From positions 496,001-560,000 of the forward strand of contig CATNEN010000002.1 in NCBI GenBank assembly GCA_950097015.1: a stretch of DNA of 64,000 nucleotides, read 5' to 3'. Each line of letters opens with the position of its first letter. Position 1 is the stretch's first letter. Shown here piece after piece: positions 3,603-37,106 of this stretch. The stretch comes from Macrostomum hystrix (lineage: Eukaryota; Animalia; Platyhelminthes). The translations under genes and the position numbers were made by a program. A model generated the notes under the pieces. That model saw nothing but the letters and a program-made list of their open reading frames with translations. It made no database searches and was not told where the DNA came from.

Positions 3603-4169
3603 TCAGAAGGCCCTACTAGCTCTTACTGTTCCACCACAGTCAAGCTCCTGCAGCTCCATCAGTTGATACTCTTCGCGCTCGTCCAGGACTAGCTCCCGGT
3701 CTCTGACGGGCATCGCTGTCGCCAGGGTGCTCTCGCAGCGGGTCAGGCAGTCCGCATCGCCAAGGCTGCTGTTTCCAGCGAAGCCGCGCTCTCTGAAGCC
3801 TCCGCCAACGTCTCTGCCACCAGCGCCGGCACTCCCTAGACGTCTCAACTCGGTGCCATGACGTCGATTCAAGTGAGCGCTGCTCTGGCGACGCGAGTCG
3901 AAGCCTTCGGCTGTGATTCTCCAGTCGAAGCAGCAGAAAATTCTCGCTAGAACTCGTTTGTAGCCGAGACGAAAGCGCTGCGACATGAAGTAGTACACCA
4001 CCGGGTTGGCGGTGGAGTTCGCAAAACCGATCAGGTGCAGCAGCACCATGGTGAAACCATAGTTGTGGTTGTACACATTCCTATTGAACAGACCAGCAAT
4101 GTTCACTGCAAACCAGGGTGTCCAGGAGATGAGGAACAGAGCTGCCACGACGATCATCATCTTAGCGAC
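3603..4169 (-). CDS. Neuropeptide-type class A GPCR, exon 3 (TM6, TM7, C-terminal tail)
   Basis: Acceptor attaccag|GTC. Translates VAKMMIVVAALFLISWTPW...FANSTANPVVYYFMSQRFR (NPxxY). Phase 0 junction with exon 2 gives KRK|VAKM. Confidence 0.9.
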   Translation of the reverse strand, partial: VAKMMIVVAALFLISWTPWFAVNIAGLFNRNVYNHNYGFTMVLLHLIGFANSTANPVVYYFMSQRFRLGYKRVLARIFCCFDWRITAEGFDSRRQSSAHLNRRHGTELRRLGSAGAGGRDVGGGFRERGFAGNSSLGDADCLTRCESTLATAMPVRDRELVLDEREEYQLMELQELDCGGTVRASRAF

Positions 4170-4384
4170 CTGGTAATTAGTAATTACGCTTGTAGATAGT
4201 GCTAGGGCTTCCAGACAGCATATTATGGATGTATCTTCGAGAATATCACTGTTTAACTGTCTTACGGTGCTTTCAGTTAACTTAATTTCTAGTGCCATTG
4301 TTGTTTATTCCTAAAATTTTTATCCTTAAAGAGAGAAAATTGAATAATTGGGTGATTATAAAATAATTAAATGAAAAAAACAAA

Positions 4385-10790: not shown

Positions 10791-10833
10791 TTTAGTCTTG
10801 TTTCCAAGCAAAAAAAGCACCGAATTCGATCAC

Positions 10834-11222
10834 CTCTCGATGCAGATGACCACCAGGGTGAACAGGCTAGCAAACACCAGCAGCATCATGCAGAAGGTGA
10901 CGAACGAGCAGCCCAAACGGTCGAACAGTTTAGCGGCTACCGAGCAGGGACCCATGAGCTGCAAGCCCTTCAGCGGCAGCACCAGCGCCGCCGCCAGGAG
11001 GTCCGTGACCGCCAGGTTCAGCACGTAGCAGTTTGTCACAGTTCGCATCGTTCGGTGCAGGCAGATGGTGCAGACGACCATCAGGTTTCCAAAAAACATC
11101 AGCAGGCCGACGCTGATCCAGGCGACTGTCAGGCTGATCTTCACAGCCGGCAGCTGCAGCAGGTCCCAGTACACGGTTGCGTTCACCTCGTGACAGTTGG
11201 AGGTCGAAGCAGTTGGAGGCAT
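10834..11222 (-). CDS. Neuropeptide-type class A GPCR, exon 1 (N-term, TM1-TM3); full model join(11222-10834,5330-4910,4169-3603), 458 aa
   Basis: GN in TM1, MRTVTNCYVLNLAVTDLL in TM2, TM3 ending CIER. Donor AG|gtgatc is phase 2 and joins exon 2 in frame. Motifs resemble orexin/allatotropin, QRFP and CCK-type peptide receptors; the subfamily cannot be assigned by eye. Confidence 0.9.
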
Positions 11223-14361: not shown

Positions 14362-17300
14362 GCTCTAGCTTCGATTCCTGCTCTAGCTACCATTCCTGCT
14401 CTATAGCTACCATTCCTGCTCTACCTACGATTCCTGCTCTAGTTACCATTCCTGCTCTAGCTACCATTCCTGCTCTATAGCTACCATTCCTGCTCTAGCT
14501 ACCATTCCTGCTCTAGCTACCATTCCTGCTCTAGCTACCATTCCTGCTCTAGCTACCATTCCTGCTCTAGCTACCATTCCTGCTCTAGCTACCATTCCTG
14601 CTCTAGCTACCATTCCTGCTCTAGCTACCATTCCTGCTCTAGCTACCATTCCTGCTCTACCTACGATTCCTGCTCTAGCTACCATTCCTGCTCTAGCTAC
14701 GATTCCTGCTCTAGCTACCATTCCTGCTCTACCTACGATTCCTGCTCTAGTTACCATTCCTGCTCTAGCTACGATTCCTGCTCTAGCTACCATTCCTGCT
14801 CTACCTACGATTCCTGCTCTAGTTACCATTCCTGCTCTAGCTACGATTCCTGCTCTAGCTACCATTCCTGCTCTACCTACGATTCCTGCTCTACCTACGA
14901 TTCCTGCTCTAGCTACCATTCCTGCTCTAGCTACCATTCCTGCTCTAGCTACCATTCCTGCTCTAGCTACGATTCCTGCTCTAGCTACCATTCCTGCTCT
15001 AGCTACCATTCCTGCTCTAGCTACCATTCCTGCTCTAGCTACCATTCCTGCTCTAGCTACCATTCCTGCTCTACCTACGATTCCTGCTCTAGTTACCATT
15101 CCTGCTCTAGCTACGATTCCTGCTCTAGCTACCATTCCTGCTCTACCTACGATTCCTGCTCTACCTACGATTCCTGCTCTAGCTACGATTCCTGCTTTAG
15201 CTTCGATTCATGCTCTACCTACGATTCCTGCTCTAGCTACCATTCCTGCTCTAGCTACCATTCCTGCTCTAGCTACCATTCCTGCTCTACCTACGATTCC
15301 TGCTCTAGTTACCATTCCTGCTCTAGCTACGATTCCTGCTTTAGCTACCATTCCTGCTCTACCTACGATTCCTGCTCTAGTTACCATTCCTGCTCTAGCT
15401 ACGATTCCTGCTCTATAGCTACCATTCCTGCTCTAGCTACCATTCCTGCTCTACCTACGATTCCTGCTCTAGTTACCATTCCTGCTCTAGCTACCATTCC
15501 TGCTCTATAGCTACCATTCCTGCTCTAGCTACCATTCCTGCTCTAGCTACGATTCCTGCTTTAGCTACCATTCCTGCTCTACCTACGATTCCTGCTCTAG
15601 TTACCATTCCTGCTCTAGCTACGATTCCTGCTCTATAGCTACCATTCCTGCTCTAGCTACCATTCCTGCTCTATAGCTACCATTCCTGCTCTACCTACGA
15701 TTCCTGCTCTAGTTACCATTCCTGCTCTAGCTACCATTCCTGCTCTATAGCTACCATTCCTGCTCTAGCTACCATTCCTGCTCTACCTACGATTCCTGCT
15801 CTAGCTACCATTCCTGCTCTATAGCTACGATTCCTGCTCTAGCTACCATTCCTGCTCTACCTACGATTCCTGCTCTAGCTACCATTCCTGCTCTATAGCT
15901 ACCATTCCTGCTCTAGCTACCATTCCTGCTCTACCTACGATTCCTGCTCTAGTTACCATTCCTGCTCTAGCTACGATTCCTGCTCTAGCTACCATTCCTG
16001 CTCTACCTACGATTCCTGCTCTACCTACCATTCCTGCTCTACCTACGATTCCTGCTCTACCTATGATTCCTGCTCTACCTACGATTCCTGCTCTATAGCT
16101 ACCATTCCTGCTCTAGCTACCATTCCTGCTCTATAGCTACCATTCCTGCTCTAGCTACCATTCCTGCTCTAGCTACCATTCCTGCTCTACCTACGATTCC
16201 TGCTCTAGCTACCATTCCTGCTCTATAGCTACCATTCCTGCTCTAGCTACCATTCCTGCTCTACCTACGATTCCTGCTCTAGTTACCATTCCTGCTCTAG
16301 CTACCATTCCTGCTCTATAGCTACCATTCCTGCTCTAGCTACCATTCCTGCTCTAGCTACGATTCCTGCTTTAGCTACCATTCCTGCTCTACCTACGATT
16401 CCTGCTCTAGTTACCATTCCTGCTCTAGCTACGATTCCTGCTCTATAGCTACCATTCCTGCTCTAGCTACGATTCCTGCTCTAGCTACGATTCCTGCTCT
16501 AGCTACCATTCCTGCTCTAGCTACCATTCCTGCTCTAGCTACCATTCCTGCTCTACCTACGATTCCTGCTCTAGCTACCATTCCTGCTCTACCTACCATT
16601 CCTGCTCTAGCTACCATTCCTGCTCTACCTACGATTCCTGCTCTAGTTACCATTCCTGCTCTAGCTTCGATTCCTGCTCTAGCTACCATTCCTGCTCTAG
16701 CTTCGATTCCTGCTCTAGCTACCATTCCTGCTCTACCTACGATTCCTGCTCTAGTTACCATTCCTGCTCTAGCTACCATTCCTGCTCTAGCTACCATTCC
16801 TGCTCTAGCTACCATTCCTGCTCTAGCTACCATTCCTGCTCTACCTACGATTCCTGCTCTAGTTACCATTCCTGCTCTAGCTACGATTCCTGCTTTAGCT
16901 ACCATTCCTGCTCTACCTACGATTCCTGCTCTAGTTACCATTCCTGCTCTAGCTACGATTCCTGCTCTATAGCTACCATTCCTGCTCTAGCTACCATTCC
17001 TGCTCTACCTACGATTCCTGCTCTAGTTACCATTCCTGCTCTAGCTACCATTCCTGCTCTATAGCTACCATTCCTGCTCTAGCTACCATTCCTGCTCTAG
17101 CTACGATTCCTGCTTTAGCTACCATTCCTGCTCTACCTACGATTCCTGCTCTAGTTACCATTCCTGCTCTAGCTACGATTCCTGCTCTATAGCTACCATT
17201 CCTGCTCTAGCTACGATTCCTGCTCTAGCTACCATTCCTGCTCTACCTACGATTCCTGCTCTAGCTACCATTCCTGCTCTAGCTACCATTCCTGCTCTAC

Positions 17301-20300
17301 CTACGATTCCTGCTCTAGCTACCATTCCTGCTCTAGCTACCATTCCTGCTCTAGCTACCATTCCTGCTCTACCTACGATTCCTGCTCTAGTTACCATTCC
17401 TGCTCTAGCTACGATTCCTGCTCTAGCTACCATTCCTGCTCTACCTACGATTCCTGCTCTACCTACGATTCCTGCTCTAGCTACGATTCCTGCTTTAGCT
17501 TCGATTCATGCTCTACCTACGATTCCTGCTCTAGCTACCATTCCTGCTCTAGCTACCATTCCTGCTCTAGCTACCATTCCTGCTCTACCTACGATTCCTG
17601 CTCTAGTTACCATTCCTGCTCTAGCTACGATTCCTGCTTTAGCTACCATTCCTGCTCTACCTACGATTCCTGCTCTAGTTACCATTCCTGCTCTAGCTAC
17701 GATTCCTGCTCTATAGCTACCATTCCTGCTCTAGCTACCATTCCTGCTCTACCTACGATTCCTGCTCTAGTTACCATTCCTGCTCTAGCTACCATTCCTG
17801 CTCTATAGCTACCATTCCTGCTCTAGCTACCATTCCTGCTCTAGCTACGATTCCTGCTTTAGCTACCATTCCTGCTCTACCTACGATTCCTGCTCTAGTT
17901 ACCATTCCTGCTCTAGCTACGATTCCTGCTCTATAGCTACCATTCCTGCTCTAGCTACGATTCCTGCTCTAGCTACGATTCCTGCTCTAGCTACCATTCC
18001 TGCTCTAGCTACCATTCCTGCTCTAGCTACCATTCCTGCTCTACCTACGATTCCTGCTCTAGCTACCATTCCTGCTCTACCTACCATTCCTGCTCTAGCT
18101 ACCATTCCTGCTCTACCTACGATTCCTGCTCTAGTTACCATTCCTGCTCTAGCTTCGATTCCTGCTCTAGCTACCATTCCTGCTCTAGCTTCGATTCCTG
18201 CTCTAGCTACCATTCCTGCTCTACCTACGATTCCTGCTCTAGTTACCATTCCTGCTCTAGCTACCATTCCTGCTCTAGCTACCATTCCTGCTCTAGCTAC
18301 CATTCCTGCTCTAGCTACCATTCCTGCTCTACCTACGATTCCTGCTCTAGTTACCATTCCTGCTCTAGCTACGATTCCTGCTTTAGCTACCATTCCTGCT
18401 CTACCTACGATTCCTGCTCTAGTTACCATTCCTGCTCTAGCTACGATTCCTGCTCTATAGCTACCATTCCTGCTCTAGCTACCATTCCTGCTCTACCTAC
18501 GATTCCTGCTCTAGTTACCATTCCTGCTCTAGCTACCATTCCTGCTCTATAGCTACCATTCCTGCTCTAGCTACCATTCCTGCTCTAGCTACGATTCCTG
18601 CTTTAGCTACCATTCCTGCTCTACCTACGATTCCTGCTCTAGTTACCATTCCTGCTCTAGCTACGATTCCTGCTCTATAGCTACCATTCCTGCTCTAGCT
18701 ACGATTCCTGCTCTAGCTACCATTCCTGCTCTACCTACGATTCCTGCTCTAGCTACCATTCCTGCTCTATAGCTACCATTCCTGCTCTAGCTACCATTCC
18801 TGCTCTACCTACGATTCCTGCTCTAGTTACCATTCCTGCTCTAGCTACGATTCCTGCTCTAGCTACCATTCCTGCTCTACCTACGATTCCTGCTCTACCT
18901 ATGATTCCTGCTCTACCTACGATTCCTGCTCTATAGCTACCATTCCTGCTCTAGCTACCATTCCTGCTCTACCTACGATTCCTGCTCTAGTTACCATTCC
19001 TGCTCTAGCTACCATTCCTGCTCTATAGCTACCATTCCTGCTCTAGCTACCATTCCTGCTCTAGCTACCATTCCTGCTCTACCTACGATTCCTGCTCTAC
19101 CTACGATTCCTGCTCTACCTACGATTCCTGCTCTAGCTACCATTCCTGCTCTATAGCTACCATTCCTGCTCTAGCTACCATTCCTGCTCTACCTACGATT
19201 CCTGCTCTAGTTACCATTCCTGCTCTAGCTACGATTCCTGCTCTAGCTACCATTCCTGCTCTACCTACGATTCCTGCTCTACCTACCATTCCTGCTCTAC
19301 CTACGATTCCTGCTCTACCTATGATTCCTGCTCTACCTACGATTCCTGCTCTATAGCTACCATTCCTGCTCTAGCTACCATTCCTGCTCTACCTACGATT
19401 CCTGCTCTAGTTACCATTCCTGCTCTAGCTACCATTCCTGCTCTATAGCTACCATTCCTGCTCTAGCTACCATTCCTGCTCTAGCTACCATTCCTGCTCT
19501 ACCTACGATTCCTGCTCTAGCTACCATTCCTGCTCTATAGCTACCATTCCTGCTCTAGCTACCATTCCTGCTCTACCTACGATTCCTGCTCTAGTTACCA
19601 TTCCTGCTCTAGCTACCATTCCTGCTCTATAGCTACCATTCCTGCTCTAGCTACCATTCCTGCTCTAGCTACGATTCCTGCTTTAGCTACCATTCCTGCT
19701 CTACCTACGATTCCTGCTCTAGTTACCATTCCTGCTCTAGCTACGATTCCTGCTCTATAGCTACCATTCCTGCTCTAGCTACCATTCCTGCTCTAGCTAC
19801 GATTCCTGCTCTAGCTACCATTCCTGCTCTATAGCTACCATTCCTGCTCTAGCTACCATTCCTGCTCTACCTACGATTCCTGCTCTAGCTACCATTCCTG
19901 CTCTACCTACGATTCCTGCTCTAGTTACCATTCCTGCTCTAGCTACGATTCCTGCTCTAGCTACCATTCCTGCTCTAGCTACCATTCCTGCTCTAGCTAC
20001 CATTCCTGCTCTAGCTACCATTCCTGCTCTAGCTACCATTCCTGCTCTACCTACGATTCCTGCTCTAGCTACCATTCCTGCTCTAGCTACCATTCCTGCT
20101 CTACCTACGATTCCTGCTCTAGCTACCATTCCTGCTCTATAGCTACCATTCCTGCTCTAGCTACCATTCCTGCTCTACCTACGATTCCTGCTCTAGTTAC
20201 CATTCCTGCTCTAGCTACGATTCCTGCTCTAGCTACCATTCCTGCTCTACCTACGATTCCTGCTCTACCTACCATTCCTGCTCTACCTACGATTCCTGCT

Positions 20301-20345
20301 CTACCTACGATTCCTGCTCTACCTACGATTCCTGCTCTAGCTACG
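14362..20345. repeat. ~6-kb minisatellite, 18-bp unit CTAGCTACCATTCCTGCT with sequence variants and a 20-bp variant
   Basis: Tandem units read directly. Identical ORF-track translations at 16429 and 17917 show an internal 1488-bp duplication. Confidence 0.97.
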
Positions 20346-20652
20346 ATTGTAGCTACGGTACTAAGCGGTGCTTTAACCTCTCCCTTTCTCTCTCCCAGTC
20401 TCTGCCTGCCTAAGTAAGTTGCATTCATTTTTTAGGTTACTGTTGGTCACATTTGTTACTATTTTATATGGGCTATTAACTTGGCGCTATAGGCAAATGG
20501 CCGTGGGACTTCTTGTCTTAGAAAATATTTTTCATTTGCATTTCTTTTTGTCAGTCACCTTGCAAACTTCTTTACTGTCCACTAGCTGAGTAGAAAGAAG
20601 ATGAGAAGTGCACAGCCAATGTCTCTGGGGTGGCTGCTGCAATTTTATTCGA

Positions 20653-20660
20653 TATATAAA
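20653..20660 (+). promoter_or_regulatory. Candidate TATA box for prepropeptide gene A
   Basis: TATATAAA about 110 bp upstream of the ATG at 20765, but in AT-rich context. Confidence 0.3.
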
Positions 20661-20764
20661 TATATGAGCTGTGACTTTTAAAGCATTATTCAAACTGACA
20701 AAACGTTGATCGCATTGTCTAGTTTACCTTGCCTTTTAGAGCCTTGTTTAAGCTGCAAGACAAA

Positions 20765-21278
20765 ATGGTCAGCAAGACTGCAATGATACTGCTGTCAATC
20801 ATTGTCATTCTTAATCTCGTCTGTTCCGCGAAGGCTGCCTCTAACGACGAAGATTTTGGTGAGGAAATTTTCTGTTAATATCAGTAAAGACAATTGTTTG
20901 TAGACTTCAATTCTGATCTAAAATTTTCCATTCTGATCTGCAGATTCTGTTGAGGAGCCGGTTGACAAGGAATCAGTCGAGAAAGTTAATGACGCCGATG
21001 CTGCTGAGGACGATGATGTTGAAAAGTGAGATGAAATTTCACGCCAGAGATATTTAATCACTGAAGATTATAACTGGTATAACAAGCTAAAAGCCGATCT
21101 AACAATTGGGTCTAACAAACACTAAAATCGAAACCTGACCTGACGAGATAAAATTACCTGTTAATGCAAGTCTTTTTACAAATGCTACTAACAAGTAGTA
21201 CTTTTTCTATTATATTTCAGACGTTGCCGCTGGTCCTACAGCTCAGCCGTGGGTAGGTATGTGTATCGCTGCGACTGA
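20765..21278 (+). CDS. Secreted prepropeptide gene A, join(20765-20858,20944-21025,21221-21278), 77 aa; predicted mature peptide CRWSYSSAVGRYVYRCD
   Basis: MVSKTAMILLSIIVILNLVCSAKA (signal-like), acidic spacer (13 D/E of 27 residues in exon 2), KR, then a 17-mer with two Cys and a stop. Both introns are canonical GT-AG (phases 1 and 2). Same architecture as paralog B. Confidence 0.85.
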
Positions 21279-21724
21279 TTCCATTCAACGCGAAGCTTCA
21301 AGTCGGTTGTTCACGTTAAAAAACATTAAATAGAACACTTTAAACATTATTTATACAGTAGTTTTACTATTATTAGCACAACTTAAGCGATGTGTTCAAC
21401 CTTAGTCGATATTTTAGTGAATTCCACAAATTTTTGCTGTTTAAAATTGTAAAATTTTCGCTACGAATAAAAATAAATTATTTTTCTATAAATCTTTGGA
21501 CCTCAAACTCAAATAAAAACACTGCGAACGGCACAACAACCTCGAAATTAGTTTTTTTGTCAAACAAAGGCTGAGATATAGGTATTCAAATAATTTTGTT
21601 GATCTCAAAAAAGCCTGTCTTTAAACTTTCTTTACAGTGTCATTTTATTTCATTTTACATATTGTAGATATAATATCTAGAAATAGATAATATCTATCTG
21701 ATTCCGTGTGATAATAATATTGAT

Positions 21725-21905
21725 ATTTGCAGGAGGGCTGTGCCACACTGGCTTGCCTAATGGTTACTGTAGACCCGCAGCCGGCGAGCTGGTAACTGTT
21801 TTGGCAGATACGCACACAGATACCGTACAAATGCAGGAACACTCAAGAACACAAACAGCCTCTGCTGGGCTAGAAGATTCGAACTCTCGACGCCTCGGTC
21901 ATAAG
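21725..21905 (-). mobile_element. SINE family B, degenerate partial copy
   Basis: TTTGCAGGAGGGCTG...TAGACCCGCAGCCGGCGAG matches the family B 3' end. Confidence 0.6.
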
Positions 21906-21932
21906 TTTACATTTTGGTGATTTTGTGTTTAA

Positions 21933-22532
21933 CAGTAAAACTACCAAGCGGGGATTCCCCCCCTGACATTTTTTGCTGCGCCCGTACGGAACAACTCAAG
22001 CACACGAAACTCAAGAACACGGGCTAACTTTTTGTTGCGCATCTTCTGAAACAAAGAATCAAGTCGCCAGTTCTTCAGACCGTCGAGATATTCAATTTTT
22101 CTGGCCGATCAGGTTTTTCCCATAAGCGCTAGTGTATTTCGTACACCACCATACATGAATTAGCACTGCGACTCAGTGCGGCCTTGCCAGGCCTTCAAAA
22201 TTGATCAGCATGTCCCCCGAATGTGCCTGCATTATCTCTGTCTTCGGTGGTCACCTATCTTTATCTAGACGGACTGCTGGACCTTCAAGGGCTACAACAG
22301 GTGGAAATAGGCCACTAACGGACACCCTGACGCGAATTTAAATTTCACTGATCAAGTCTAACTATTAGGCGCAGCTCAACCACAGGACACCATCGTCTAG
22401 TCTGTCAACCAATCAGTCACCACCCAACGCTGCTAGCATGCAGGCGCTGCCAAAAACTTTTCAGGGAGGAGGGGAATTTCCGTTGAAATTTGGAATAAAA
22501 ACGGGCTGCAAAATGGCTAAGTAGTCTTACTG
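21933..22532. mobile_element. 600-bp non-autonomous DNA element (MITE-like) with imperfect ~17-bp terminal inverted repeats
   Basis: Left end CAGTAAAACTACCAAGC versus reverse complement of right end CAGTAAGACTACTTAGC. About 450 bp of the body recurs at 36600-37100. No coding capacity and no clear TSD. Confidence 0.7.
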
Positions 22533-23069
22533 TTGACAACCAGCTCTTTACAGCATGATATTTACAGCATTTCCATATAAAGTAGAACGAATCCTTATAA
22601 AAAGCACCATCATAATGGGTCTAAAAACTAGATCTATGAGTTTGTGCGCTCTACTTGCGAGGCAAATTAATTTTGCTCATTGTTCTTTGCAGCCTTGCAT
22701 CTTCCATTTATAAAATGGAAATTCTCTTAGTTAGCCATTTTTCATTCTCATTCATAGCTTTTCGGTTCATAACACACACTCTGTTGGAAAACAAAATCGG
22801 CACACGCGGGTTTGCAATGGGGTGAAAGCAGTAGAGCTAACAACAATGGGCTCTTTATATTGCAAAGCTCGCACTATAGTGGCTGCCAAGCACAGTCGAA
22901 ACCCATCTAGCTCTATTAAACGAGAATGCGATCTGGCGTTCGTTCTCGTGTCGCGAACACGTGCAGCACTAGCGAGTCTGTTGTCTTTAAATATACACGA
23001 TCCAGCTCTTCAATTCATCTTTAAGCCTTGCTCTTCAATTATTATATCGGCAGTACTCAAAACATAACA

Positions 23070-24199
23070 ATGAACAGTCTCACAGTTCTTCTGCTAATGT
23101 CTATGGCAGTGCTTCTGGTCTGCTCCGTACAGGCCGAGTCAAACCAGGATGATATTGGTGAGTGCAGAAACGTTAAGTTGAGTCTGTTTTAAACTTCTCT
23201 AATCATGTGAACTAGAATGGACCTCATTGTAACTTCAGATGTCGTAGAGGAACCCGCAGCTAATCAGGATTACGCTGAAGATGACGAGGCTGATGCCGAC
23301 AAAGCTGATGCTGGTGAAGATGTGACTGACGATATCGAGAAGTGAGTTGAAAATTATCTGTCTAACAGTGTCTAACACTAATAACTGCATCTAACAGGTT
23401 GATTATGGGTCTAACAGGTTGATTATGGGTCTAACAGGTTGATTATGGGTCTAACAGGTTGATTATGGGTCTAACAGGTTGATTATGGGTCTAACAGGTT
23501 GATTATGGGTCTAACAGGTTGATTATGGGTCTAACAGGTTGATTATGGGTCTAACAGGTTGATTAAGGGTCTAACAGGTTGATTATGGGTCTAACAGGTT
23601 GATTATGGGTCTAACAGGTTGATTATGGGTCTAACAGGTTGATTATGGGTCTAACAGGTTGATTATGGGTCTAACAGGTTGATTATGGGTCTAACAGGTT
23701 GATTATGGGTCTAACAGGTTGATTATGGGTCTAACAGGTTGATTATGGGTCTAACAGGTTGATTATGGGTCTAACAGGTTGATTATGGGTCTAACAGGTT
23801 GATTATGGGTCTAACAGGTTGATTATGGGTCTAACAGGTTGATTATGGGTCTAACAGGTTGATTATGGGTCTAACAGGTTGATTATGGGTCTAACAGGTT
23901 GATTATGGGTCTAACAGGTTGATTATGGGTCTAACAGGTTGATTATGGGTCTAACAGGTTGATTATGGGTCTAACAGGTTGATTATGGGTCTAACAGGTT
24001 GATTATGGGTCTAACAGGTTGATTATGGGTCTAACAGGTTGATTATGGGTCTAACGGGTTGATTATGGGTCTAACAGGTTGATTATGGGTCTAACAGGTT
24101 GATTTAACGTTTAAATAAGAGCAGTTTGCCTTGCATTTCAGAAAGTGCAAGTGGATCTACAGTGCCATCGCTGGCAGATACGTGCATGCCTGCAGCTGA
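23070..24199 (+). CDS. Secreted prepropeptide gene B, join(23070-23157,23239-23341,24142-24199), 82 aa; predicted mature peptide CKWIYSAIAGRYVHACS
   Basis: MNSLTVLLLMSMAVLLVCSVQA (signal-like), acidic spacer (16 D/E of 34 residues in exon 2), KK, then a 17-mer. Intron positions and phases are identical to gene A, and exon 3 has the same 58-nt coding length. Confidence 0.85.
23392..24104. repeat. 20-bp minisatellite GATTATGGGTCTAACAGGTT (~35 near-identical copies) in intron 2 of prepropeptide gene B
   Basis: Read directly; only two variant units seen. Confidence 0.97.
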
Positions 24200-25039
24200 A
24201 ATCCGCTGATGTTCTAACCTAAAACTACATTTTCGATTGCGGAATTTGATTTAAACGAATGATTGCTAAATGTCGTATATTCTAGCACATTTTTTATACC
24301 AACTTACAATGAACTTTAGTATTTGATAGGAATTACGGATTAATCTGTGATCAAGTTAAAGGCCGATATGTGGTTATAATGAAGGAAATAAATAGGTACT
24401 TATATATGACCTGTATGCATTGCTATCTGGTGGAAGACAGTTATTCAAGGTTCTGTTTGTATTTTTAAAGCTTTTTGCTTCATTTCTACTATCGCTCCAC
24501 TGTTTTACATCTATCCTGCCTCATCTCTCCATCTCTTCCCTTTATCATTTCTCTACTCTATTTTTCGATGACTACTTCTTGTTCCACCCTTAAGCCATTG
24601 TTCAGTACACATGGTATTTATAATTTTTTCACAGCAATTCACATTTCGCAAAGTAATGCTTCATTCCATTCCATTTTCAACTCATAAAACTGCCAAAATT
24701 GTATTCTTAAGAAATGTTTCAAAAGAAAATTAATGTTAGCAAGGCTTAGCAATTCTAATGAATAGAAGAAGTCACGTGCTAGCTCGTGCTAGAAACCAAA
24801 GGAACAAAAGCAGCAGCAGCAGCAGCAGATAGTGAAATGCAAGAATTTATTTGAAAAATAGGTAAACGCATTCGGAATCGTAGTAGAGCTACTTTGTTAC
24901 CGAAATTGGCTATAATTAAGATACAGCAATCCGTGGGTTTCTTCGTTAAAGAAGGCTATGCAGCTCCCACACTCAATGGCGCCAAATTATGCATGAATTT
25001 AGGTTTTGATAACTGAGTAACAGCAACAAATTAAATTGT

Positions 25040-25330
25040 TCTCACCAGCGAGGCAGCGCGTCTCTGGGCCAACGAGCTCAAAAAGTCCCGCCCGCCAGCC
25101 TGGTCCAAGGAAAACTGAAATAGTAGCCGTGCTTGTTCGGTCTGGGGCGCCAGCAACACTCAGAAGCCGGGTCAGGGTATCTCGCCGCTCGCCCTTGGCC
25201 TCGCTTCCGCGGGCCTCCGACCGGAGGACAAGGCCAGCTAATCGAAGTCGCGCAGCCGCGCAACAGGTCAAAAAGCCGCGTCAGGTGCGCCCTTGCATTA
25301 AGAGCGGCATAGGTCTCGCTGCCTGCATTG
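25040..25330 (-). mobile_element. Degenerate non-LTR retrotransposon (RTE-like) ORF2 C-terminal fragment
   Basis: GC-rich island. Minus-strand frames give RLRLAGLVLR, GPRKRGQGRAARYPD and LLSVAGAPD, resembling the post-RT 'RRLRxAGHxxR' region of RTE-type LINEs; frameshifted. Confidence 0.5.
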
Positions 25331-28300
25331 GGCCGCTGCGCGCGCCGAACGCCGCAAGTAACTGCATGAGTACATTTGGCAATTAAGCCAATAATTTTAG
25401 GGGATCACGGGGATCACGAAAAATATAGAAAGGCAGGTTACTGTGCACTAGGAGTTGATTCCAAGCGACCTGCAAGTAAGCCATCAGTTTTTTAATTCGG
25501 GGAGCTGTTCGTCCTTATCCTTTGGCGCCTTTGCTTGGACAATATTTCTAAGCATTTTGTCGAGGTTTTAAGAGCATTTACAAAAAATGTACAAAAATCT
25601 GGTTATCGCAAATCAAAAAAATGTACAATTCAAAAATTTAAAAAATGTGAAAGTGCGCATTGCATTAAAGATTGGATACTATATCTTACCTTGCATTTTA
25701 CATTTCTTGCTTTCGCATCTTCATGTCCATGTCCTACGATAATACTAAAAATGCTCGCCTATTTTCTTTGTGCAACATATATATCAGGTGAAATGTGTCT
25801 AAAGCGTTTTAAAAAAAAAAGTTTTTACTGATATAAATAACACAACAGAGATCCTTATTTTCTCATATGTTACAATTTTGATTTACGATTTAGAAGACTG
25901 CGCACTAACACAAACTGTTTTGTTTTCTAATGTGCGCGCACGCATCGCATCTCACGAAACCTTAGTCGTACTTAATAAAGTTAATATTAGTATTAGTCTC
26001 TCTATATAGCGAACAATGTATATAAATATGAGTGTGTTTATATTTATCTATCAAATACCTTTTTAGGGCCTACCTAACTTAAAGACATTAATCTGCAGCC
26101 CAGCCACTACAGTGAGGTTTTTATATTATATTTTAGGAGTATATATGAGTATATGTTATACTCCTTCATAATGTAGGCCTATAAATTTGCTGGTACCAGC
26201 TGGTGTTGCCTACTAACTATTAATAGTGGCATAAGCATTATAGTATGGTTCCAGTCATAATTTAAACTGAAAGTTGTGCAATGAATGAAAGTAACACTAG
26301 CAATATACCTAGATTTAAATTTAAATATTGTTGCACTGGTGGCATAGTCTGTTGCTGAAATAAACCCATGGTCCATAGAAAGTAGTGGCTCTGATGTGGC
26401 ACCCATATTGTGGATGTTTTTTCTGGTTTGCCATAATTTTTTTTGACTTGACACATTCTAGAAATTTATAATGGTGTAGGCCTACATAACAGAAACCCCC
26501 GGTATCCCAAATGTATGTCACACATTCTGCAATATGGCATCATTCAATTCTTGGTAACTTGGGTTTGAGCAGAATTTCTAATTTCGCAACAACTTCAGCT
26601 TCACTCATAGATTCACCCATAATCCAGTAGCATGTTCTCCCTAGCATGCACCCATAGTCAGTAAGGTAGCAGTGTGTGCTGGAAAACAATTTACAACTAA
26701 AAAAATTGTGCACCATGTATGTACCCCATAGTCCAGATCATGCTAAGTGCAGTTAAAACAAAATCATAGAGTTTTCTTTGGCACCCTAATGCCAAGCAGA
26801 TACATGTGAAGATATATTGTGATTACTTTTTGTATGCCATAAAGTTTTAATGTAGGCTCCAATTTCAAAAATTTTTTTAGTTTTAATTTTAACATGTCTA
26901 GCATTTTTTAACTAAGTTATTTAAGCAAATTATATTGCCTATTAGCATTAAATTGTTTCATGAAAAAGTTAATTTATGCAAATATTATATTCCATGATGC
27001 ATTACTTAAGACATTCAACAGATCATACCTTTTTGAACTGAATAAAGTCTTAAGTCTTAGTATTATAATTTTGTAATAGCTACTAATTTTAATTATGAAA
27101 GTTTTTTTCAGTTTTGTGTATACTCATACCACGTTATAGACAAGTAAGGTAAAATGCAACACAAGGGTTTGAGCAATTGTGTTGGTGTGTCTACAGGTTG
27201 CACACTGAACTTTTGCAAAGCTATGTACCAGTTTGTGTTTTTATGTGCCTCATAGATGACAGAAAAGGCCTAGTGTACCATTTCTAACATACATGCACAA
27301 CACCCAGCCAAACCGGCCAGGTGAAATGAGGGCCAAGCAAGGTAAGTCGCAAAAACTAATCGACCAAGCGCAAAAAAACAAAGGAGGGACCAAGGGACAA
27401 AAAAGGAAAGCGTGAAGAAAAGGAAAAGGGGAGAGAAAAAGAGAGCAAATGAGAGGAAACTAAGTCGTAAATAGAGCAATGAAACGAACTAAGTCGCAAA
27501 TGAGAACAAAAACTAAGTCGCACGGCTGGCTAAGATTTGGGAGGTTGTGCATGTATGATTTCTAACCACTTAGTGGTCAATTACTGCCTAACCTATGTGA
27601 ATATATAGGACCCCAATATCCACACAGACCTGATGGAGCTAGAAAAGTACATGTGATTGGCCAATGCTAAGTGCAAGCATCAAAACATCTATTGTATGGA
27701 TGCAGCCACAACATATATATAGGAGTTTTTTGACATAAAAAGTTTTGGCATTCCCTGCACTATATCTCACTGATCATTGATCACTGACCTTTTCAATATT
27801 CCTGTTTCCTTGTTAAGCAAGTTTTTTTCTCTGGACAAATTAGAGCCTAATTATCCTGATCCTGATCCTTTTTATTTATAATTTAGTTTTACACTTTGGA
27901 TCATGTCTGCTGTGCTTATAAGCTATAAAATTGTATGTGTGGCTGCCATGCTTTTGATATTGATTTGTGGCTTGCTTATATAGTAATGGACATGGTGGCA
28001 ATGTCTATAGGCCTAACTAGATTAGTTACTTCTGCAAGCCAATCTAAATTAGGAATTTTGTAATATTTAGAGTTGCACTGGTTGACCCAATCAATTTGTG
28101 GTATAGTAGGCTGCATGTTGTTTTGTATCTTTTCTGGTTTCAGGTTCAGAAGTTGTCAGACATTTTCCTTAATTTTTATAGTATTGGTATATTCTCCTGG
28201 AACTCTCCATTTTCTTTTTGTGGATGTTCCAAGTTGAACATATTATTAAAAGTTTCATGCTTAAACTAAGGTATAATAAATTCCTAAAATGAGGTTGACA

Positions 28301-32957: not shown

Positions 32958-35729
32958 ATGGTGCATAAAGTATGTGTCTACTAGGGTGAAATCTGTATTT
33001 TGAGTAGAACTCTAAGAGGCCTATAAAAACGTGTTAATCAGCGGTCTCAGCTTTCCGGCCCTGTCGTGTTCCTATTGCAGTCGCGCCTCTTGTCCCGCTT
33101 ACTCTTCCGCCCGCTGGGCGCATCCAATGTGTGGTGTAACGCAGCGGCCCTGCCAATCGCCTCGGCAATGCCGTGGAAAATCGAGCGGCGTCTGGCGGGT
33201 CACTCGCGCTGGCAGAATGTGCGCTCCGATAAGGAGGCCGGCATGGCCCAGAAGCGGTCACTGATGACCAATTATCTGCGCCTGTTGCGCAAGGCTATTA
33301 TCGATGGCAACGGTAGCACCAGCATGCAGGCCAATGTGCACCTGAAGGCGGTGTTCGACCGAGCCAAGTCTGACAATGTGCCGCTGAAAACTTTAGAAAA
33401 GATGCTGGCCTCCAAGTCCAAAGATGGAGTCGAGCCTTATGTGGTGGAGGTGCGTGGCCGAGGCGGCATTTGTCTACTGGTCCAGTGCAACAGCCCCGCT
33501 AAGACCAAGAGCAGGCAGGATGTGAGTGGGGATTTCACTGCCTTCAATCTGCCTTTTGCTTGAATTGGGATATCATGATGGTTCTAGGCTATTGGGATAT
33601 ACTCGTAGTGGGATAATAATTGGCTATTGTTATAATAATAATAATAATTGCAGGAGGGCTGCGGGCAATGGCACATCATTCGGTGACACTAGACCCGCAG
33701 CCAGCGAGGAGGCAATTCTGCACATCTCGCTGACTCCTGAGCACACACGCACACAGATACTGTACGCAGGCACACGCTCACACAGGTGTGTACATCTGCT
33801 CTGACTTTCTCATCGTCAGGCAGTGTACACTCTCACTGTTCATTGGAGGTTGGCCCTCATGGGCGTAAAATATGCACGACAAGCCCCCAAGCCTTCTCTC
33901 AGCGGCTGCTCCCCATGTAAATGTGGCCTCGCCGTGGAATCGAACTTAGGGACCTTGGTGCGAGAGGCAAACGCGTTAACCGCTCTGCCACTCACCCCCA
34001 GGCTATTTAAATGTCGTGGGATAATAAGAAACGGGATAGATAAGACACAGGAGAGATTAGAAAGGGAAGAGATGAGACACGGGAGAGATTAGAAAGGGAG
34101 AGATAAGACACGGGAGAGATTAGAAAGGGATTATATAAGACAGGATGCTATAGGTGTCGTAAGGGGCAACGGGCCGGATTTTAAGCTTCGAGGGCCGCAT
34201 CTGGCATCCGGGCCAGAGTTTGCCGACCCCAGGGTTTAAGGCTTAGATGCTTGCTATTTTTCCCTTTGAAGTTAAAGTGATTAGCAAATGGAAAATTGGG
34301 AATGAGGATGACGAAGTTAAAAATAAACAGTTTCAACGTCCTCTAAGATTTGGAAAGAAAATATTTTAACTTGACATTTTATTACGAGCTAGAGCTATGC
34401 ATAATTATAAAGTTGCATGTTATGCCTAGTAGGCTTGCATAGGGTATAAAATAGTGTGGATTAACTTTGCATTTGGGGGTTAAAATTCCTTAATTTCGAT
34501 TATATTTTGGGTAGGAATAGTTATTGTAAATTGTATTCTAAATTGCTTCATAATTTATTATAATTCCATGATATATTTAGGGTACCACAATATTCGGAAA
34601 TATTATCCAATTTTATCAGGCATTCGCATCACAAGAAGTGTTTTACGTGACAGTTTTTTTAAGTCCAAACAAATTTGGGGAATAGAACGAAAGTTGTTTA
34701 AAAAAAATTTTGTTGTGATTGTGGGCGTCTTGGGTGAGGCGAGTTTGTAGGTTGAGGTGGGTGTCTGAGGTGAGTTGGTTGTCTGGGTTGAGGTTAGTGT
34801 CTAGATTGAGTTGGTTGTCTGGGATGAGGTGGGTGTCTGGGGTGAGGTGGGTGTCTAGGTTGAGTTGGTTGTCTGGGATGAGGTGGGTGTCTGGGATGAG
34901 GTGGGTGTCTGGGGTGAGGTGGGTGTCTAGATTGAGGTGAGTGTCTCGGGTGAGGTGGGTGTCTAGGTTGAGTTGGTTGTCTGGGGTGAGGTGGGTGTCT
35001 GGGGTGAGGTGGGTCTCTAGGATGAGGTGGGTGTCTAGGTTGAGTTGGTTGTCTGGGATGAGGTGGGTGTCTGGGGTGAGGTGGGTGTCTGGGATGAGGT
35101 GGGTGTCTAGGATGAGGTGGGTGTCTGGGGTGAGTTGGTTGTCTGGGATGAGGTGGGTGTCTGGGATGAGGTGGGTGTCTGGGGTGAGGTGGGTGTCTAG
35201 GTTGAGGTGGGTGTCGAATTATTAATTCATTCTAAGCTAAAAAAATAAGCTAAAATCTCATTAAGTCATGCTTGCCCTTTTACCGCAGATTACAAATCAA
35301 GTGAAACGCATTGGTCTGGAAGTGGCTGGCATAGATTCATCAGTTAGTAAAAGCTTCTTCGATAAGAAGGGCAGCGTTGAGGTGTCGCACGATCCAGTGA
35401 AACTGTCAAACTTGGATCAGGCCACTGAGCTGGCGTTGGAGTTCGACTGCGCTGATGTTCGCTTCGAGGACAGCGACAGCGCCGATGGCGGCGGCGGCAT
35501 TTTCGTGTTCGAATGCGCTCCAACCTCCGTTGACCTGGTAGCCGAGGGTCTTCGGTCTTCCGGCCTGTCTGTCCTGGATGCATCTGTGCGCTACGAGCCA
35601 TTCGAACGAGTCGAATTAGATTCGGAAACTTTGCAATTGTTAAACGAATTAGTTGATCGAATACGCGAACAAGTCGACGGAGTTGTTCAGGTGTTTGACA
35701 ACGTCACAGAGGTTGGCAGCAATTGCTGA
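32958..35729 (+). CDS. TACO1: TACO1 / YebC-PmpR family protein, model join(32958-32969,33081-33521,35289-35729), 297 aa
   Basis: AGHSRWQNVR..K corresponds to the family AGHxKW motif; EVRGRGGICLLV, FFDKKG and a C-terminal D-V-V-Q-V-F-D-N motif are also present. Donor GAT|gtgagt and acceptor ttaccgcag|ATT are in frame. The 12-nt first exon (ATGGTGCATAAA|gtatgt) is inferred and less certain. Confidence 0.85.
33646..33999 (-). mobile_element. tRNA-derived SINE family B, full length, in TACO1 intron
   Basis: Reverse complement head GGTGAGTGGCAGAGCGGTTAACGCG (A-box) and GTTCGATTCC (B-box); (TTA)n tail; possible 7-bp TSD GGCTATT on both sides. Confidence 0.85.
34035..34140. repeat. Short purine-rich ~29-bp tandem repeat (GATAAGACACGGGAGAGATTAGAAAGGGA)
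   Basis: Three to four imperfect copies. Confidence 0.7.
34151..34231. mobile_element. hAT-like terminal remnant
   Basis: Reverse complement TGGGGTCGGCAAACTCTGGCCCGGATGCCAGATGCGGCCC resembles the typical hAT non-autonomous end (CAGGGGTCGGCAAAC...GGCCCGCGGGCC...GCGGCCC). No TSD seen. Confidence 0.45.
34728..35215. repeat. 18-bp G-rich minisatellite GGG(G/A)TGAGGTGGGTGTCT in TACO1 intron
   Basis: Tandem variants read directly. Confidence 0.93.
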
Positions 35730-36568: not shown

Positions 36569-37106
36569 CAGTAGAACTTAACGAACTTAACAAAGATTAC
36601 GGGCCAACTTTTTGTTGCGCATCTTCTGAAACAAGAATCAAGTCGCCAGTTCTTCAGACCATCGAGATATTCAATGTTTCTGGCCGAAGGTCTGATTTTT
36701 CCGATAAGCGCTAGTGTATTTCATACACCCCTATACACGAATTAGCACTGCGACTCAGTGCGGCCTTGCCAGGCCTTCAAAATTTATCAGCAAGTCACCC
36801 GAATGTGCCTGCATTATCTGTCTTCGGCGGTCACCAACCTTTATCTAGACGGACTGCTGGACCTTCAAGGGCTACAGCAGGTGGAAATAGGCCACTATAG
36901 ACGCCCTGACGCGAATTTCTCCAATTTCACTGATCAAGTCTAACTATTAGGCGCAGCTCAACCACAGGACACCATCGTCTAGTCTGTCAACCAATCAGTC
37001 ATTACCTAGCGCTGTTAGCATTCAGGCGCTGCCAAAAAATTACAGTTTCTCGAAATTCCCGCCTTGGTATAAAACCGGGCGGCAAAATGGCTCGGAAGTC
37101 TTACTG
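36569..37106. mobile_element. Second copy of the CAGTA...TACTG MITE-like element
   Basis: Body colinear with 22021-22532; ends CAGTAG... and ...GTCTTACTG; about 60 bp missing near the left end. Confidence 0.7.

What the first reader, a model, noticed from the sequence alone, without database searches (positions are those of the whole stretch)
20765..24199. Tandem pair of cryptic prepropeptide genes defining a possibly undescribed cyclic-peptide family
Seen in sequence: two 3-exon genes, both missed by the ORF track, with identical intron positions and phases (1 and 2). Exon 1 encodes a signal-like peptide, exon 2 an acidic spacer (about half D/E), and exon 3 completes a dibasic site (E-KR, E-KK) followed by a 17-aa peptide and a stop. 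The mature peptides CRWSYSSAVGRYVYRCD and CKWIYSAIAGRYVHACS share 9 of 17 positions (C-x-W-x-Y-S-x-x-x-G-R-Y-V-x-x-C), while signal, spacer and introns have diverged. Established: signal + acidic propiece + dibasic convertase site is the standard architecture of neuropeptide, toxin and antimicrobial peptide precursors. Inference: these are processed, secreted, disulfide-cyclised effectors under purifying selection. I do not recognise the family.
Basis: partly seen in the sequence, partly recalled or inferred. Interest (0 to 1): 0.92.

Follow-up and report, generated by a model that had tools for sequence, protein, structure and literature searches.

The report
Two expressed orphan flatworm peptide-precursor genes
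Two neighbouring small genes in a Macrostomum flatworm genome are really transcribed and spliced as predicted, and encode secreted precursors that probably release a 17-residue disulfide-looped peptide with no detectable relative in any database searched; what the peptide does is untested.

Summary
Two 3-exon genes lie on the + strand (CDS 20765-21278 and 23070-24199). All introns are GT..AG, at homologous positions, in phases 1 and 2. They encode 77- and 82-aa proteins: signal peptide, acidic propiece (46-47% D/E), a KR or KK site, then a 17-aa C-terminal peptide with Cys at positions 1 and 16 (9/17 identical).

Spliced contigs from four public runs of two studies show three junctions directly. 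The fourth shows as a loose end at 23341 that continues with the first 30 bases of exon 3 at 24142.

The genome (220,453,370 bases, 42 contigs) matches the published Macrostomum hystrix assembly. The motif occurs only at these two places in it.

No relative was found by phmmer against 1.84 billion proteins, a word-based protein search, PDB, full-text paper search or the planarian prohormone supplements. MCH-, somatostatin- and urotensin-II-type criteria are not met.

Cleavage, the disulfide and function are inferred. A beta-hairpin is predicted confidently for gene 1 only. My best reading is a lineage-restricted signalling peptide; a defence peptide is a close rival.

The scan noted this stretch twice (s1-384922, s1-384946).

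The parts
20704..21569 (+). Gene 1 transcript, minimal extent covered by a spliced RNA-run contig
   Evidence: Run X5 record 14 (608 nt, 0 mismatches) lies on 20704-20857, 20943-21025 and 21221-21569. TATATAAA at 20653-20660 is about 45 nt upstream. AATAAA stands at 21466, 21472 and 21512.
20765..20858 (+). Gene 1 exon 1 CDS: signal peptide (residues 1-24, likely cleaved after AKA) and start of the propiece; ends in phase 1
   Evidence: translation. Kyte-Doolittle peak of 3.3 over residues 6-16. AlphaFold helix 4-23. Joint 20857/8 to 20943/4 seen in X1, X3 and X5.
20944..21025 (+). Gene 1 exon 2: acidic propiece; ends in phase 2 inside the first codon of the KR site
   Evidence: Joint 21025 to 21221 seen in X1, X2, X3 and X5.
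21221..21278 (+). Gene 1 exon 3 CDS: completes K, then R, then the 17-aa peptide CRWSYSSAVGRYVYRCD (21225-21275) and the stop (21276-21278)
   Evidence: Six-frame protein search of the genome: E = 4.2e-7 at this place.
22995..24450 (+). Gene 2 transcript, approximate extent
   Evidence: Contigs start at 22995 (X3), 23003 (X2) and 23047 (X5). 291-309 letters hang beyond 23341, which would reach about 24432-24450 if they follow exon 3. AATAAA at 24387. Only the first 30 hanging letters were checked against the window.
23070..23157 (+). Gene 2 exon 1 CDS: signal peptide (residues 1-22, likely cleaved after VQA) and start of the propiece; ends in phase 1
   Evidence: Joint 23156/7 to 23238/9 seen in X2, X3 and X5.
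23239..23341 (+). Gene 2 exon 2: acidic propiece; ends in phase 2 inside the first codon of the KK site
   Evidence: All four runs end their fit at 23341 and continue with the first 30 bases of exon 3.
23390..24104 (+). 20-bp x 35.8 minisatellite that fills most of gene 2 intron 2 (23342-24141)
   Evidence: Tandem Repeats Finder: 99% matches, score 1416. The unit resembles the intron's own 5' end.
24142..24199 (+). Gene 2 exon 3 CDS: completes K, then K, then the 17-aa peptide CKWIYSAIAGRYVHACS (24146-24196) and the stop (24197-24199)
   Evidence: The loose-end consensus matches a single place in the window, 24142-24171, preceded by TTTCAG.

Best explanation
This is a tandem pair of old paralogous genes in a Macrostomum flatworm, most likely M. 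hystrix. Each is transcribed on its own and spliced from three exons into a small mRNA of about 0.55-0.6 kb. Each mRNA encodes a prepropeptide.

Shown: transcription, the four splice junctions, the reading frames, the presence of only two copies in the genome, and the lack of detectable relatives.

Inferred, in order:
1. Signal peptidase cuts after AKA(24) in gene 1 and VQA(22) in gene 2.
2. The strongly acidic propiece (net charge -14 and -18) carries the precursor through the secretory pathway.
3. A kexin/PC2-type proprotein convertase cuts after KR or KK. The site is not a furin RxxR site.
4. This frees the C-terminal 17-mer directly. It ends at the stop codon, so it needs no carboxypeptidase trimming, and it has no Gly for amidation.
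5. Cys1 and Cys16 close a 16-residue ring, probably a two-stranded hairpin. W3, Y5, Y12 and Y/H14 would lie on one face and the conserved G10-R11 at the turn.

My preferred function is an extracellular signalling peptide (neuropeptide or hormone-like) of a lineage-restricted family. The two paralogues may have diverged in receptor preference.

Confidence by layer:
- genes real and spliced as stated: about 0.95
- processed to a disulfide-looped 17-mer: about 0.65
- signalling role rather than defence or another role: about 0.4-0.45
For: - Splicing and expression: spliced contigs in 4 runs of 2 studies, with the fourth junction verified.
- Coding: the precursor is the longest ORF in each mRNA, with A at -3 of each ATG.
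- Architecture: a hydrophobic N-terminus with small residues at -3/-1, 46-47% D/E in the propiece, and a single dibasic site placed directly before Cys1 in both paralogues.
- Processing enzymes: the genome has at least six loci with the proprotein-convertase P domain above the Pfam cut-off.
- Conserved positions: the paralogues keep both Cys, W3, Y5, S6 and the contiguous G-R-Y-V. Four of these nine residues use different codons.
- Constraint: a close relative has 0/226 CDS changes against 7/220 3' UTR changes in gene 1 (p = 0.007).
- Fold: AlphaFold2 on gene 1 alone gives a hairpin (residues 61-66 and 71-76) at pLDDT about 90.
- For signalling rather than antimicrobial action: net charge is only +2; the propiece charge far exceeds what would neutralise the peptide; the KR/KK site is not a furin site; and a single C-terminal disulfide-loop peptide after a dibasic site is the layout of somatostatin-, MCH- and urotensin-type precursors (PMC4772807, PMC3493602).
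Against: - There is no peptide-level evidence. Cleavage, the disulfide and secretion are untested.
- The tissue of expression is unknown. The published positional RNA-seq table could not be mapped to these genes.
- AlphaFold2 on gene 2 gives a low-confidence helix (residues 51-80, pLDDT 61-74), not a hairpin.
- Conservation is not focused on the mature peptide. The signal peptide and the propiece N-terminus are just as conserved, so the propiece or the whole proprotein might be the functional part.
- No receptor is known.
- 9/17 identity is low for neuropeptide paralogues.
- Tandem duplication, fast divergence and taxonomic restriction are also typical of defence peptides.
Confidence: 0.45

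Rival explanations
1. Host-defence or toxin-like effector. The 17-mers would be amphipathic, disulfide-stapled beta-hairpin peptides released from gland, epidermal or gut cells. They would act on microbial or prey membranes or targets, like arenicins, thanatin or ranacyclins. The acidic propiece would keep them harmless inside the cell.
For: - They fit the descriptive criteria of the beta-hairpin AMP class in PMC13001179: length 11-25 (here 17), net charge +1 to +8 (here +2), and at least one Cys pair more than 3 residues apart.
- A hairpin is predicted for gene 1.
- Alternating aromatic/aliphatic and polar/basic residues are present.
- An anionic propiece is classical for cationic defence peptides.
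- Tandem duplication, deep paralogue divergence and the absence of relatives outside the lineage are typical of defence genes.
Against: - Net charge is at the low end.
- Asp and His are present, which the same review finds rare in this class.
- The propiece charge (-14/-18) is far out of balance with +2.
- Specific contiguous residues (GRYV) are conserved, rather than just charge and hydrophobicity.
- No hairpin is predicted for gene 2.
- There is no BRICHOS or other known AMP pro-domain.
- No activity data exist.
- The immune-gene neighbourhood suggested by other first-stage notes was not confirmed in my Pfam scans.
Confidence: 0.3
2. A secreted product with a reproductive or other non-signalling role, for example a seminal-fluid or gland secretion component. 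Alternatively, the acidic proprotein itself, or its conserved N-terminal SNxxDxDxVEEP segment, is the functional part, and the C-terminal loop is only a tail.
For: - The propiece N-terminus is conserved 8/13, at least as well as the 17-mer.
- Macrostomum reproduction-related secreted genes evolve fast and are hard to find homologues for (PMC10468722).
- These are short, abundant-looking transcripts.
Against: - The dibasic site directly before Cys1 is conserved in both paralogues, together with DD[VI]E before it.
- The transcripts are held by all four listed runs of the 2020 study and by runs of a second study. That does not suggest a narrowly staged product, although the sample types are unknown.
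Confidence: 0.15
3. A highly diverged member of a known bilaterian cyclic neuropeptide family (MCH, somatostatin/allatostatin-C or urotensin II type), unrecognisable by sequence search.
For: - The precursor layout is the same: a single C-terminal disulfide-loop peptide after a dibasic site.
- There are local look-alikes. G-R-aromatic/aliphatic residues with Cys six positions after Gly resemble vertebrate MCH. C-x-W-x-Y resembles the urotensin II core CFWKYC.
Against: The published criteria are not met.
- MCH-type needs a ring of 10-12 residues, Met or Ile after Cys1, and a basic residue two before Cys2 (PMC4772807). Here the ring has 16 residues, Arg/Lys follows Cys1, and Tyr/His stands two before Cys2.
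- Somatostatin-type needs CxxxFxxxxxxC. Urotensin II needs a six-residue ring.
- MCH-type peptides are so far reported only from deuterostomes.
- The matches of 3-4 residues are within chance for a 17-mer.
Confidence: 0.07

Closest known systems
C-terminal disulfide-loop neuropeptide precursors (somatostatin/allatostatin-C, MCH and urotensin II types)
   Same: A small precursor with a signal peptide and a spacer, and one bioactive peptide at the extreme C-terminus after a dibasic site. The peptide has two Cys that form one ring and is not amidated.
   Different: The ring has 16 residues, against 6 (urotensin II), 10-12 (MCH) or 12 (somatostatin). None of the family motifs is present. No sequence relative is detectable.
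Beta-hairpin antimicrobial peptides with one disulfide (arenicin-1/2, thanatin, ranacyclins)
   Same: A 17-21 residue peptide closed by one disulfide near its ends. It is rich in aromatic and aliphatic residues plus Arg, and is cut out of a larger precursor (PMC13001179).
   Different: Net charge is only +2. There is no BRICHOS pro-domain (arenicins) and no C-terminal amidation (ranacyclins). The hairpin is predicted for one paralogue only. Antimicrobial activity is untested. This is a structural class, not a homologous family.
Planarian 'secreted peptide prohormone' (spp) and npp genes, including tandem expanded sets such as the Planarins (Collins et al. 2010, PMC2953531)
   Same: Flatworm-restricted small prohormone genes without relatives outside the phylum. 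Some sit as neighbouring duplicated genes, and they are processed at basic sites.
   Different: No GRYV-like string (six variants tried) occurs in the supplementary tables of that paper. Those peptides are mostly linear and often amidated.

Membership tests
MCH-type neuropeptide | Two Cys forming a ring of 10 (vertebrates) or 12 (ambulacrarians) residues | tested here: not met
   The ring here has 16 residues, Cys1 to Cys16. Criterion from PMC4772807.
MCH-type neuropeptide | Met or Ile directly after the first Cys, and a basic residue penultimate to the second Cys | tested here: not met
   Arg or Lys follows Cys1. Tyr (gene 1) or His (gene 2) stands two before Cys16. Criterion.
MCH-type neuropeptide | [quoted passage not shown] | tested here: met
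   This feature is shared with several unrelated families.
Somatostatin-type neuropeptide | CxxxFxxxxxxC motif | tested here: not met
   No Phe is present, and 14 residues lie between the Cys. Motif from PMC4772807.
Urotensin II-type neuropeptide | Cyclic hexapeptide core CFWKYC | tested here: not met
   CRWSYS and CKWIYS share only C, W and Y, and there is no Cys at position 6. Core from PMC3493602.
Beta-hairpin antimicrobial peptide (structural class) | Length 11-25, net charge +1 to +8, at least one Cys pair separated by 3 or more residues | tested here: met
   17 aa, net charge +2, Cys1 and Cys16. Criteria from PMC13001179.
Beta-hairpin antimicrobial peptide (structural class) | Folds as a single beta-hairpin | tested here: inconclusive
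   Gene 1: strands 61-66 and 71-76 at pLDDT about 90. Gene 2: helix at pLDDT 61-74. Both are single-sequence predictions.
Beta-hairpin antimicrobial peptide (structural class) | Antimicrobial or membrane-disrupting activity | not testable with these tools
   Needs synthetic oxidised peptide and MIC assays.
Prohormone / neuropeptide precursor (generic kind) | Signal peptide, convertase site(s) flanking a short peptide, and convertases encoded in the genome | tested here: met
   P_proprotein domain loci in the genome.
Prohormone / neuropeptide precursor (generic kind) | Expression in neurons or endocrine cells, and detection of the mature peptide | not testable with these tools
   Only whole-run contigs were available. 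The positional RNA-seq table could not be mapped.

The most novel reading that the evidence does not exclude
These two genes would found a previously undescribed, Macrostomum-restricted family of cyclic peptides: a 16-residue disulfide ring with an aromatic face (W3, Y5, Y12) and a conserved GRYV turn/strand. The peptides would act either as new neuropeptide ligands with their own receptor or as the first beta-hairpin defence peptides known from flatworms.
Probability: 0.5. Interest if true: 0.5.

Novelty: new member of a known kind. Interest (0 to 1): 0.42.

Why it matters
Free-living flatworms such as Macrostomum are models for regeneration, reproduction and nervous-system evolution. Their peptide repertoire is known mainly for linear amidated peptides.

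This is a validated, expressed gene pair for a disulfide-looped peptide with no relatives. It offers two short peptides that are easy to synthesise. They can be tested directly by receptor deorphanisation, antimicrobial assays, RNAi and in situ hybridisation in a tractable animal.

The pair also shows how such short multi-exon genes escape ORF-based detection. The scan flagged several other orphan disulfide-loop peptide genes in this genome, so this class may be larger than is recognised. This single locus does not overturn anything. Orphan secreted-peptide genes are expected in fast-evolving flatworm genomes.

Tried and rejected
- Full-text search for four substrings of the peptides: 0 papers.
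- The search for homologous proteins with the gene 2 propiece plus peptide (53 aa): no candidate. The two paralogues share no 5-residue word, so this tool is weak here.
- phmmer of the 77-aa gene 1 precursor against 1.84 billion representatives: 0 hits at E <= 0.001.
- PDB phmmer with both peptides at E <= 10: nothing.
- Six GRYV-like strings in the supplements of the planarian prohormone paper: none.
- Three searches of the window's own genome (two degenerate DNA patterns and a 20-aa protein): only the two known places, against 0-1 control hits.
I therefore laid 20650-23389, so the last acceptor is supported only through the loose-end sequence.
- Rfam on 18000-27000: nothing.
- Positional RNA-seq Table S5 of Wiberg et al. 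2023 lists transcript ids without coordinates, and the stored copy is cut. The genes could not be mapped to a body region.
- The GPCR ORF 17 kb downstream has only unnamed relatives; the best named one is a Capitella hypothetical protein at 42% identity. I draw no ligand-receptor inference from it.
- I could not confirm the cGAS-like receptor neighbours named in other first-stage notes with Pfam scans of the larger ORFs. I do not use an 'immune locus' argument.
- Orthologues in diverged Macrostomum species (M. lignano, M. cliftonense) could not be sought.
- The ESM Atlas search was not run, because it takes only references and a spliced protein has none.
Full report
**What is in the sequence.**
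I read 20400-24600 and rebuilt both gene models.
- Gene 1 has CDS exons 20765-20858, 20944-21025 and 21221-21278 (234 nt, 77 aa).
- Gene 2 has CDS exons 23070-23157, 23239-23341 and 24142-24199 (249 nt, 82 aa).
- The four introns (85, 195, 81 and 800 nt) all begin with GTGAG and end with a pyrimidine-rich tract plus CAG.
- Intron 1 is in phase 1 and intron 2 in phase 2 in both genes.
- Both introns interrupt homologous codons: the Asp after F/I, and the first Lys of the dibasic pair.
- Each ATG has A at -3.
- In each spliced mRNA the precursor is the longest ORF.

**The proteins.**
- The N-terminus is hydrophobic, with small residues at -3/-1. Cleavage after AKA24 in gene 1 and VQA22 in gene 2 is inferred from the -3/-1 rule. 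No SignalP was available.
- The propiece has 16/34 and 19/41 Asp+Glu, giving a net charge of -14 and -18.
- There is one dibasic site, KR in gene 1 and KK in gene 2.
- A 17-residue C-terminal peptide with Cys at positions 1 and 16 follows, then the stop codon.
- The two 17-mers share 9/17 residues, and 0 of 100,000 shuffles reached that.
- Four of the nine identical residues are encoded by different codons.

**Are the genes used?**
One search for sequencing runs gave eight runs from two studies.
- Contigs skip exactly 20858 to 20944 (3 runs), 21025 to 21221 (4 runs) and 23157 to 23239 (3 runs), each with GT..AG ends.
- In all four runs the fit ends at 23341. The contig then goes on with 30 letters that occur once in the window, at 24142-24171, directly after TTTCAG.
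- All four predicted junctions are therefore supported.
- Because they skip the introns, these contigs must come from RNA, although the run type was only guessed.
- Run X5 is identical to the window. Runs X1-X3 carry other organism labels and differ by a few percent.
- In X3, gene 1 has 0 differences in 226 covered CDS bases and 7 substitutions plus 2 indels in 220 bases of 3' UTR (one-sided Fisher p = 0.007).
- Gene 2 shows one synonymous change (Thr5) and one Asp-to-Gly change in the spacer.
- Gene 1 mRNA spans at least 20704-21569. A TATA box lies at 20653 and AATAAA signals at 21466-21512.
- Gene 2 mRNA starts at or before 22995.

**Organism.**
- The window is contig 2, positions 496001-560000, of a genome of 220,453,370 bases in 42 contigs.
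- The published Macrostomum hystrix assembly is described as about 220 Mb in 42 contigs (PMC10468722).
- Earlier agents of this scan also call the genome a macrostomid flatworm.
- I take M. hystrix as very likely, but I did not test it by sequence.

**How many copies, and how old.**
- Two degenerate DNA patterns for the motif and a 20-aa six-frame protein search find only these two places in the genome, against 0-1 control hits.
- At DNA level the loci align only over exon 1 to exon 2 (61% over 214 nt) and exon 3 (65% over 65 nt). Flanks and intron 2 do not align.
- This is an old tandem duplication, not a recent one.

Conservation is not confined to the mature peptide. Along the global alignment the identities are:
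- signal peptide 11/24
- first 13 propiece residues 8/13 (SNxxDxDxVEEP)
- middle of the spacer 5/24
- DDxEKx 4/6
- mature peptide 9/17

Only the middle of the spacer has really diverged. The paralogue comparison alone therefore does not show selection aimed at the 17-mer. The conserved start of the propiece might be a sorting signal or a second product.

**Relatives.**
None was found.
- Full-text search for peptide substrings gave 0 papers.
- The word-based protein search found no candidate.
- Exhaustive phmmer of the gene 1 precursor against 1.84 billion representatives gave 0 hits at E <= 0.001.
- PDB returned nothing at E <= 10 for either peptide.
- The planarian prohormone supplements held none of the six GRYV-like strings I tried.
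- These searches have little power for a 17-residue motif embedded in low-complexity sequence.
- The protein collections evidently do not hold even these proteins themselves. Absence of hits is therefore weak evidence of true restriction.
- I could not search other Macrostomum genomes.

**Comparison with known families.**
- The layout is that of somatostatin-, MCH- and urotensin-type precursors: one C-terminal disulfide-loop peptide after a dibasic site.
- The published criteria are not met. MCH-type needs a ring of 10-12 residues, Met or Ile after Cys1 and a basic residue two before Cys2. Somatostatin-type needs CxxxFxxxxxxC (PMC4772807). Urotensin II needs the six-residue ring CFWKYC (PMC3493602).
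- The local look-alikes (GR..., Cys six residues after Gly, C-x-W-x-Y) are within chance for so short a peptide.
- The peptides do satisfy the descriptive criteria of the beta-hairpin antimicrobial class: 11-25 residues, charge +1 to +8, and a Cys pair more than 3 residues apart (PMC13001179).
- That class is defined by shape and activity, not by descent. Its Arg-richness and avoidance of Asp and His fit these peptides poorly.

**Structure.**
- AlphaFold2 without an alignment gives, for gene 1, a signal helix (4-23), a disordered propiece and a hairpin (61-66 and 71-76, loop S-A-V-G) at pLDDT about 90.
- That hairpin would pair Cys1 with Cys16. It would put W3, Y5, Y12 and Y14 on one face.
- For gene 2 the same method gives a low-confidence helix (residues 51-80, pLDDT 61-74).
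- The hairpin idea (also first-stage note s1-384946) is thus supported for one paralogue only and remains a prediction.

**Mechanism.**
- The genome carries several proprotein-convertase P-domain loci, so the needed enzymes exist.
- The sites VEKR|C and IEKK|C lack Arg at P4. They look like PC2/kexin-type sites rather than furin sites (my knowledge of convertase specificity, not tested here).
- The peptide ends at the stop codon, so neither carboxypeptidase trimming nor amidation is needed.

Weighing the function:
- For a receptor-directed signalling peptide: low net charge, a propiece charge far beyond neutralisation, a contiguous conserved GRYV, and the precursor layout.
- For a defence peptide: hairpin-like amphipathic chemistry, tandem duplication, fast divergence and lineage restriction.
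- I put signalling at about 0.4-0.45, defence or toxin-like at about 0.3, another secreted role or a functional propiece at about 0.15, and a hidden member of a known cyclic neuropeptide family at about 0.07.

**Verdict.**
- The family is unrecognised in everything I could search.
- It is a new member of a well-known kind of gene, not a new kind of system.
- The scan has flagged several other orphan disulfide-loop peptide genes in this same genome. That makes this one less singular, and it suggests a class worth a systematic look.

Noticed in passing
window 23390-24104: A 20-bp x 35.8 minisatellite (99% matches) fills intron 2 of gene 2. Its unit (GTTGATTATGGGTCTAACAG) resembles the intron's own 5' end at 23346-23368, and each unit carries AG|GT and a TCTAAC branch-point-like motif. 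Gene 1 intron 2 also has two TCTAACA motifs. RNA still joins 23341 to 24142. This looks like the 'splice-site minisatellites' reported elsewhere in this genome.
   Followed up: partly
window 19000-20348: An 18-bp x 73.9 minisatellite (91% matches) lies a few hundred bases upstream of gene 1. It produces long spurious ORFs on the minus strand (MVARAG repeats) and weak collagen/LED Pfam hits in similar arrays at 14461-18429.
   Followed up: no
window 22013-22456 and 36593-37038: An interspersed repeat lies between the two peptide genes, with a 91% identical copy 14 kb downstream. Many contigs of run X5 lie partly on it at high depth, so it is a transcribed or multi-copy element.
   Followed up: partly
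window 3603-4298, 10830-11222 and 41662-42642 (all - strand): Rhodopsin-type GPCR (7tm_1) ORFs lie on both sides of the peptide gene pair. The downstream one has only unnamed relatives; the best named one is a Capitella teleta hypothetical GPCR at 42% identity. There is no evidence of a link to the peptides.
   Followed up: partly
window 33066-33563 (+): This ORF has a TACO1/YebC N-terminal domain hit (E = 1.7e-9), probably an exon of the mitochondrial translational activator gene.
   Followed up: no
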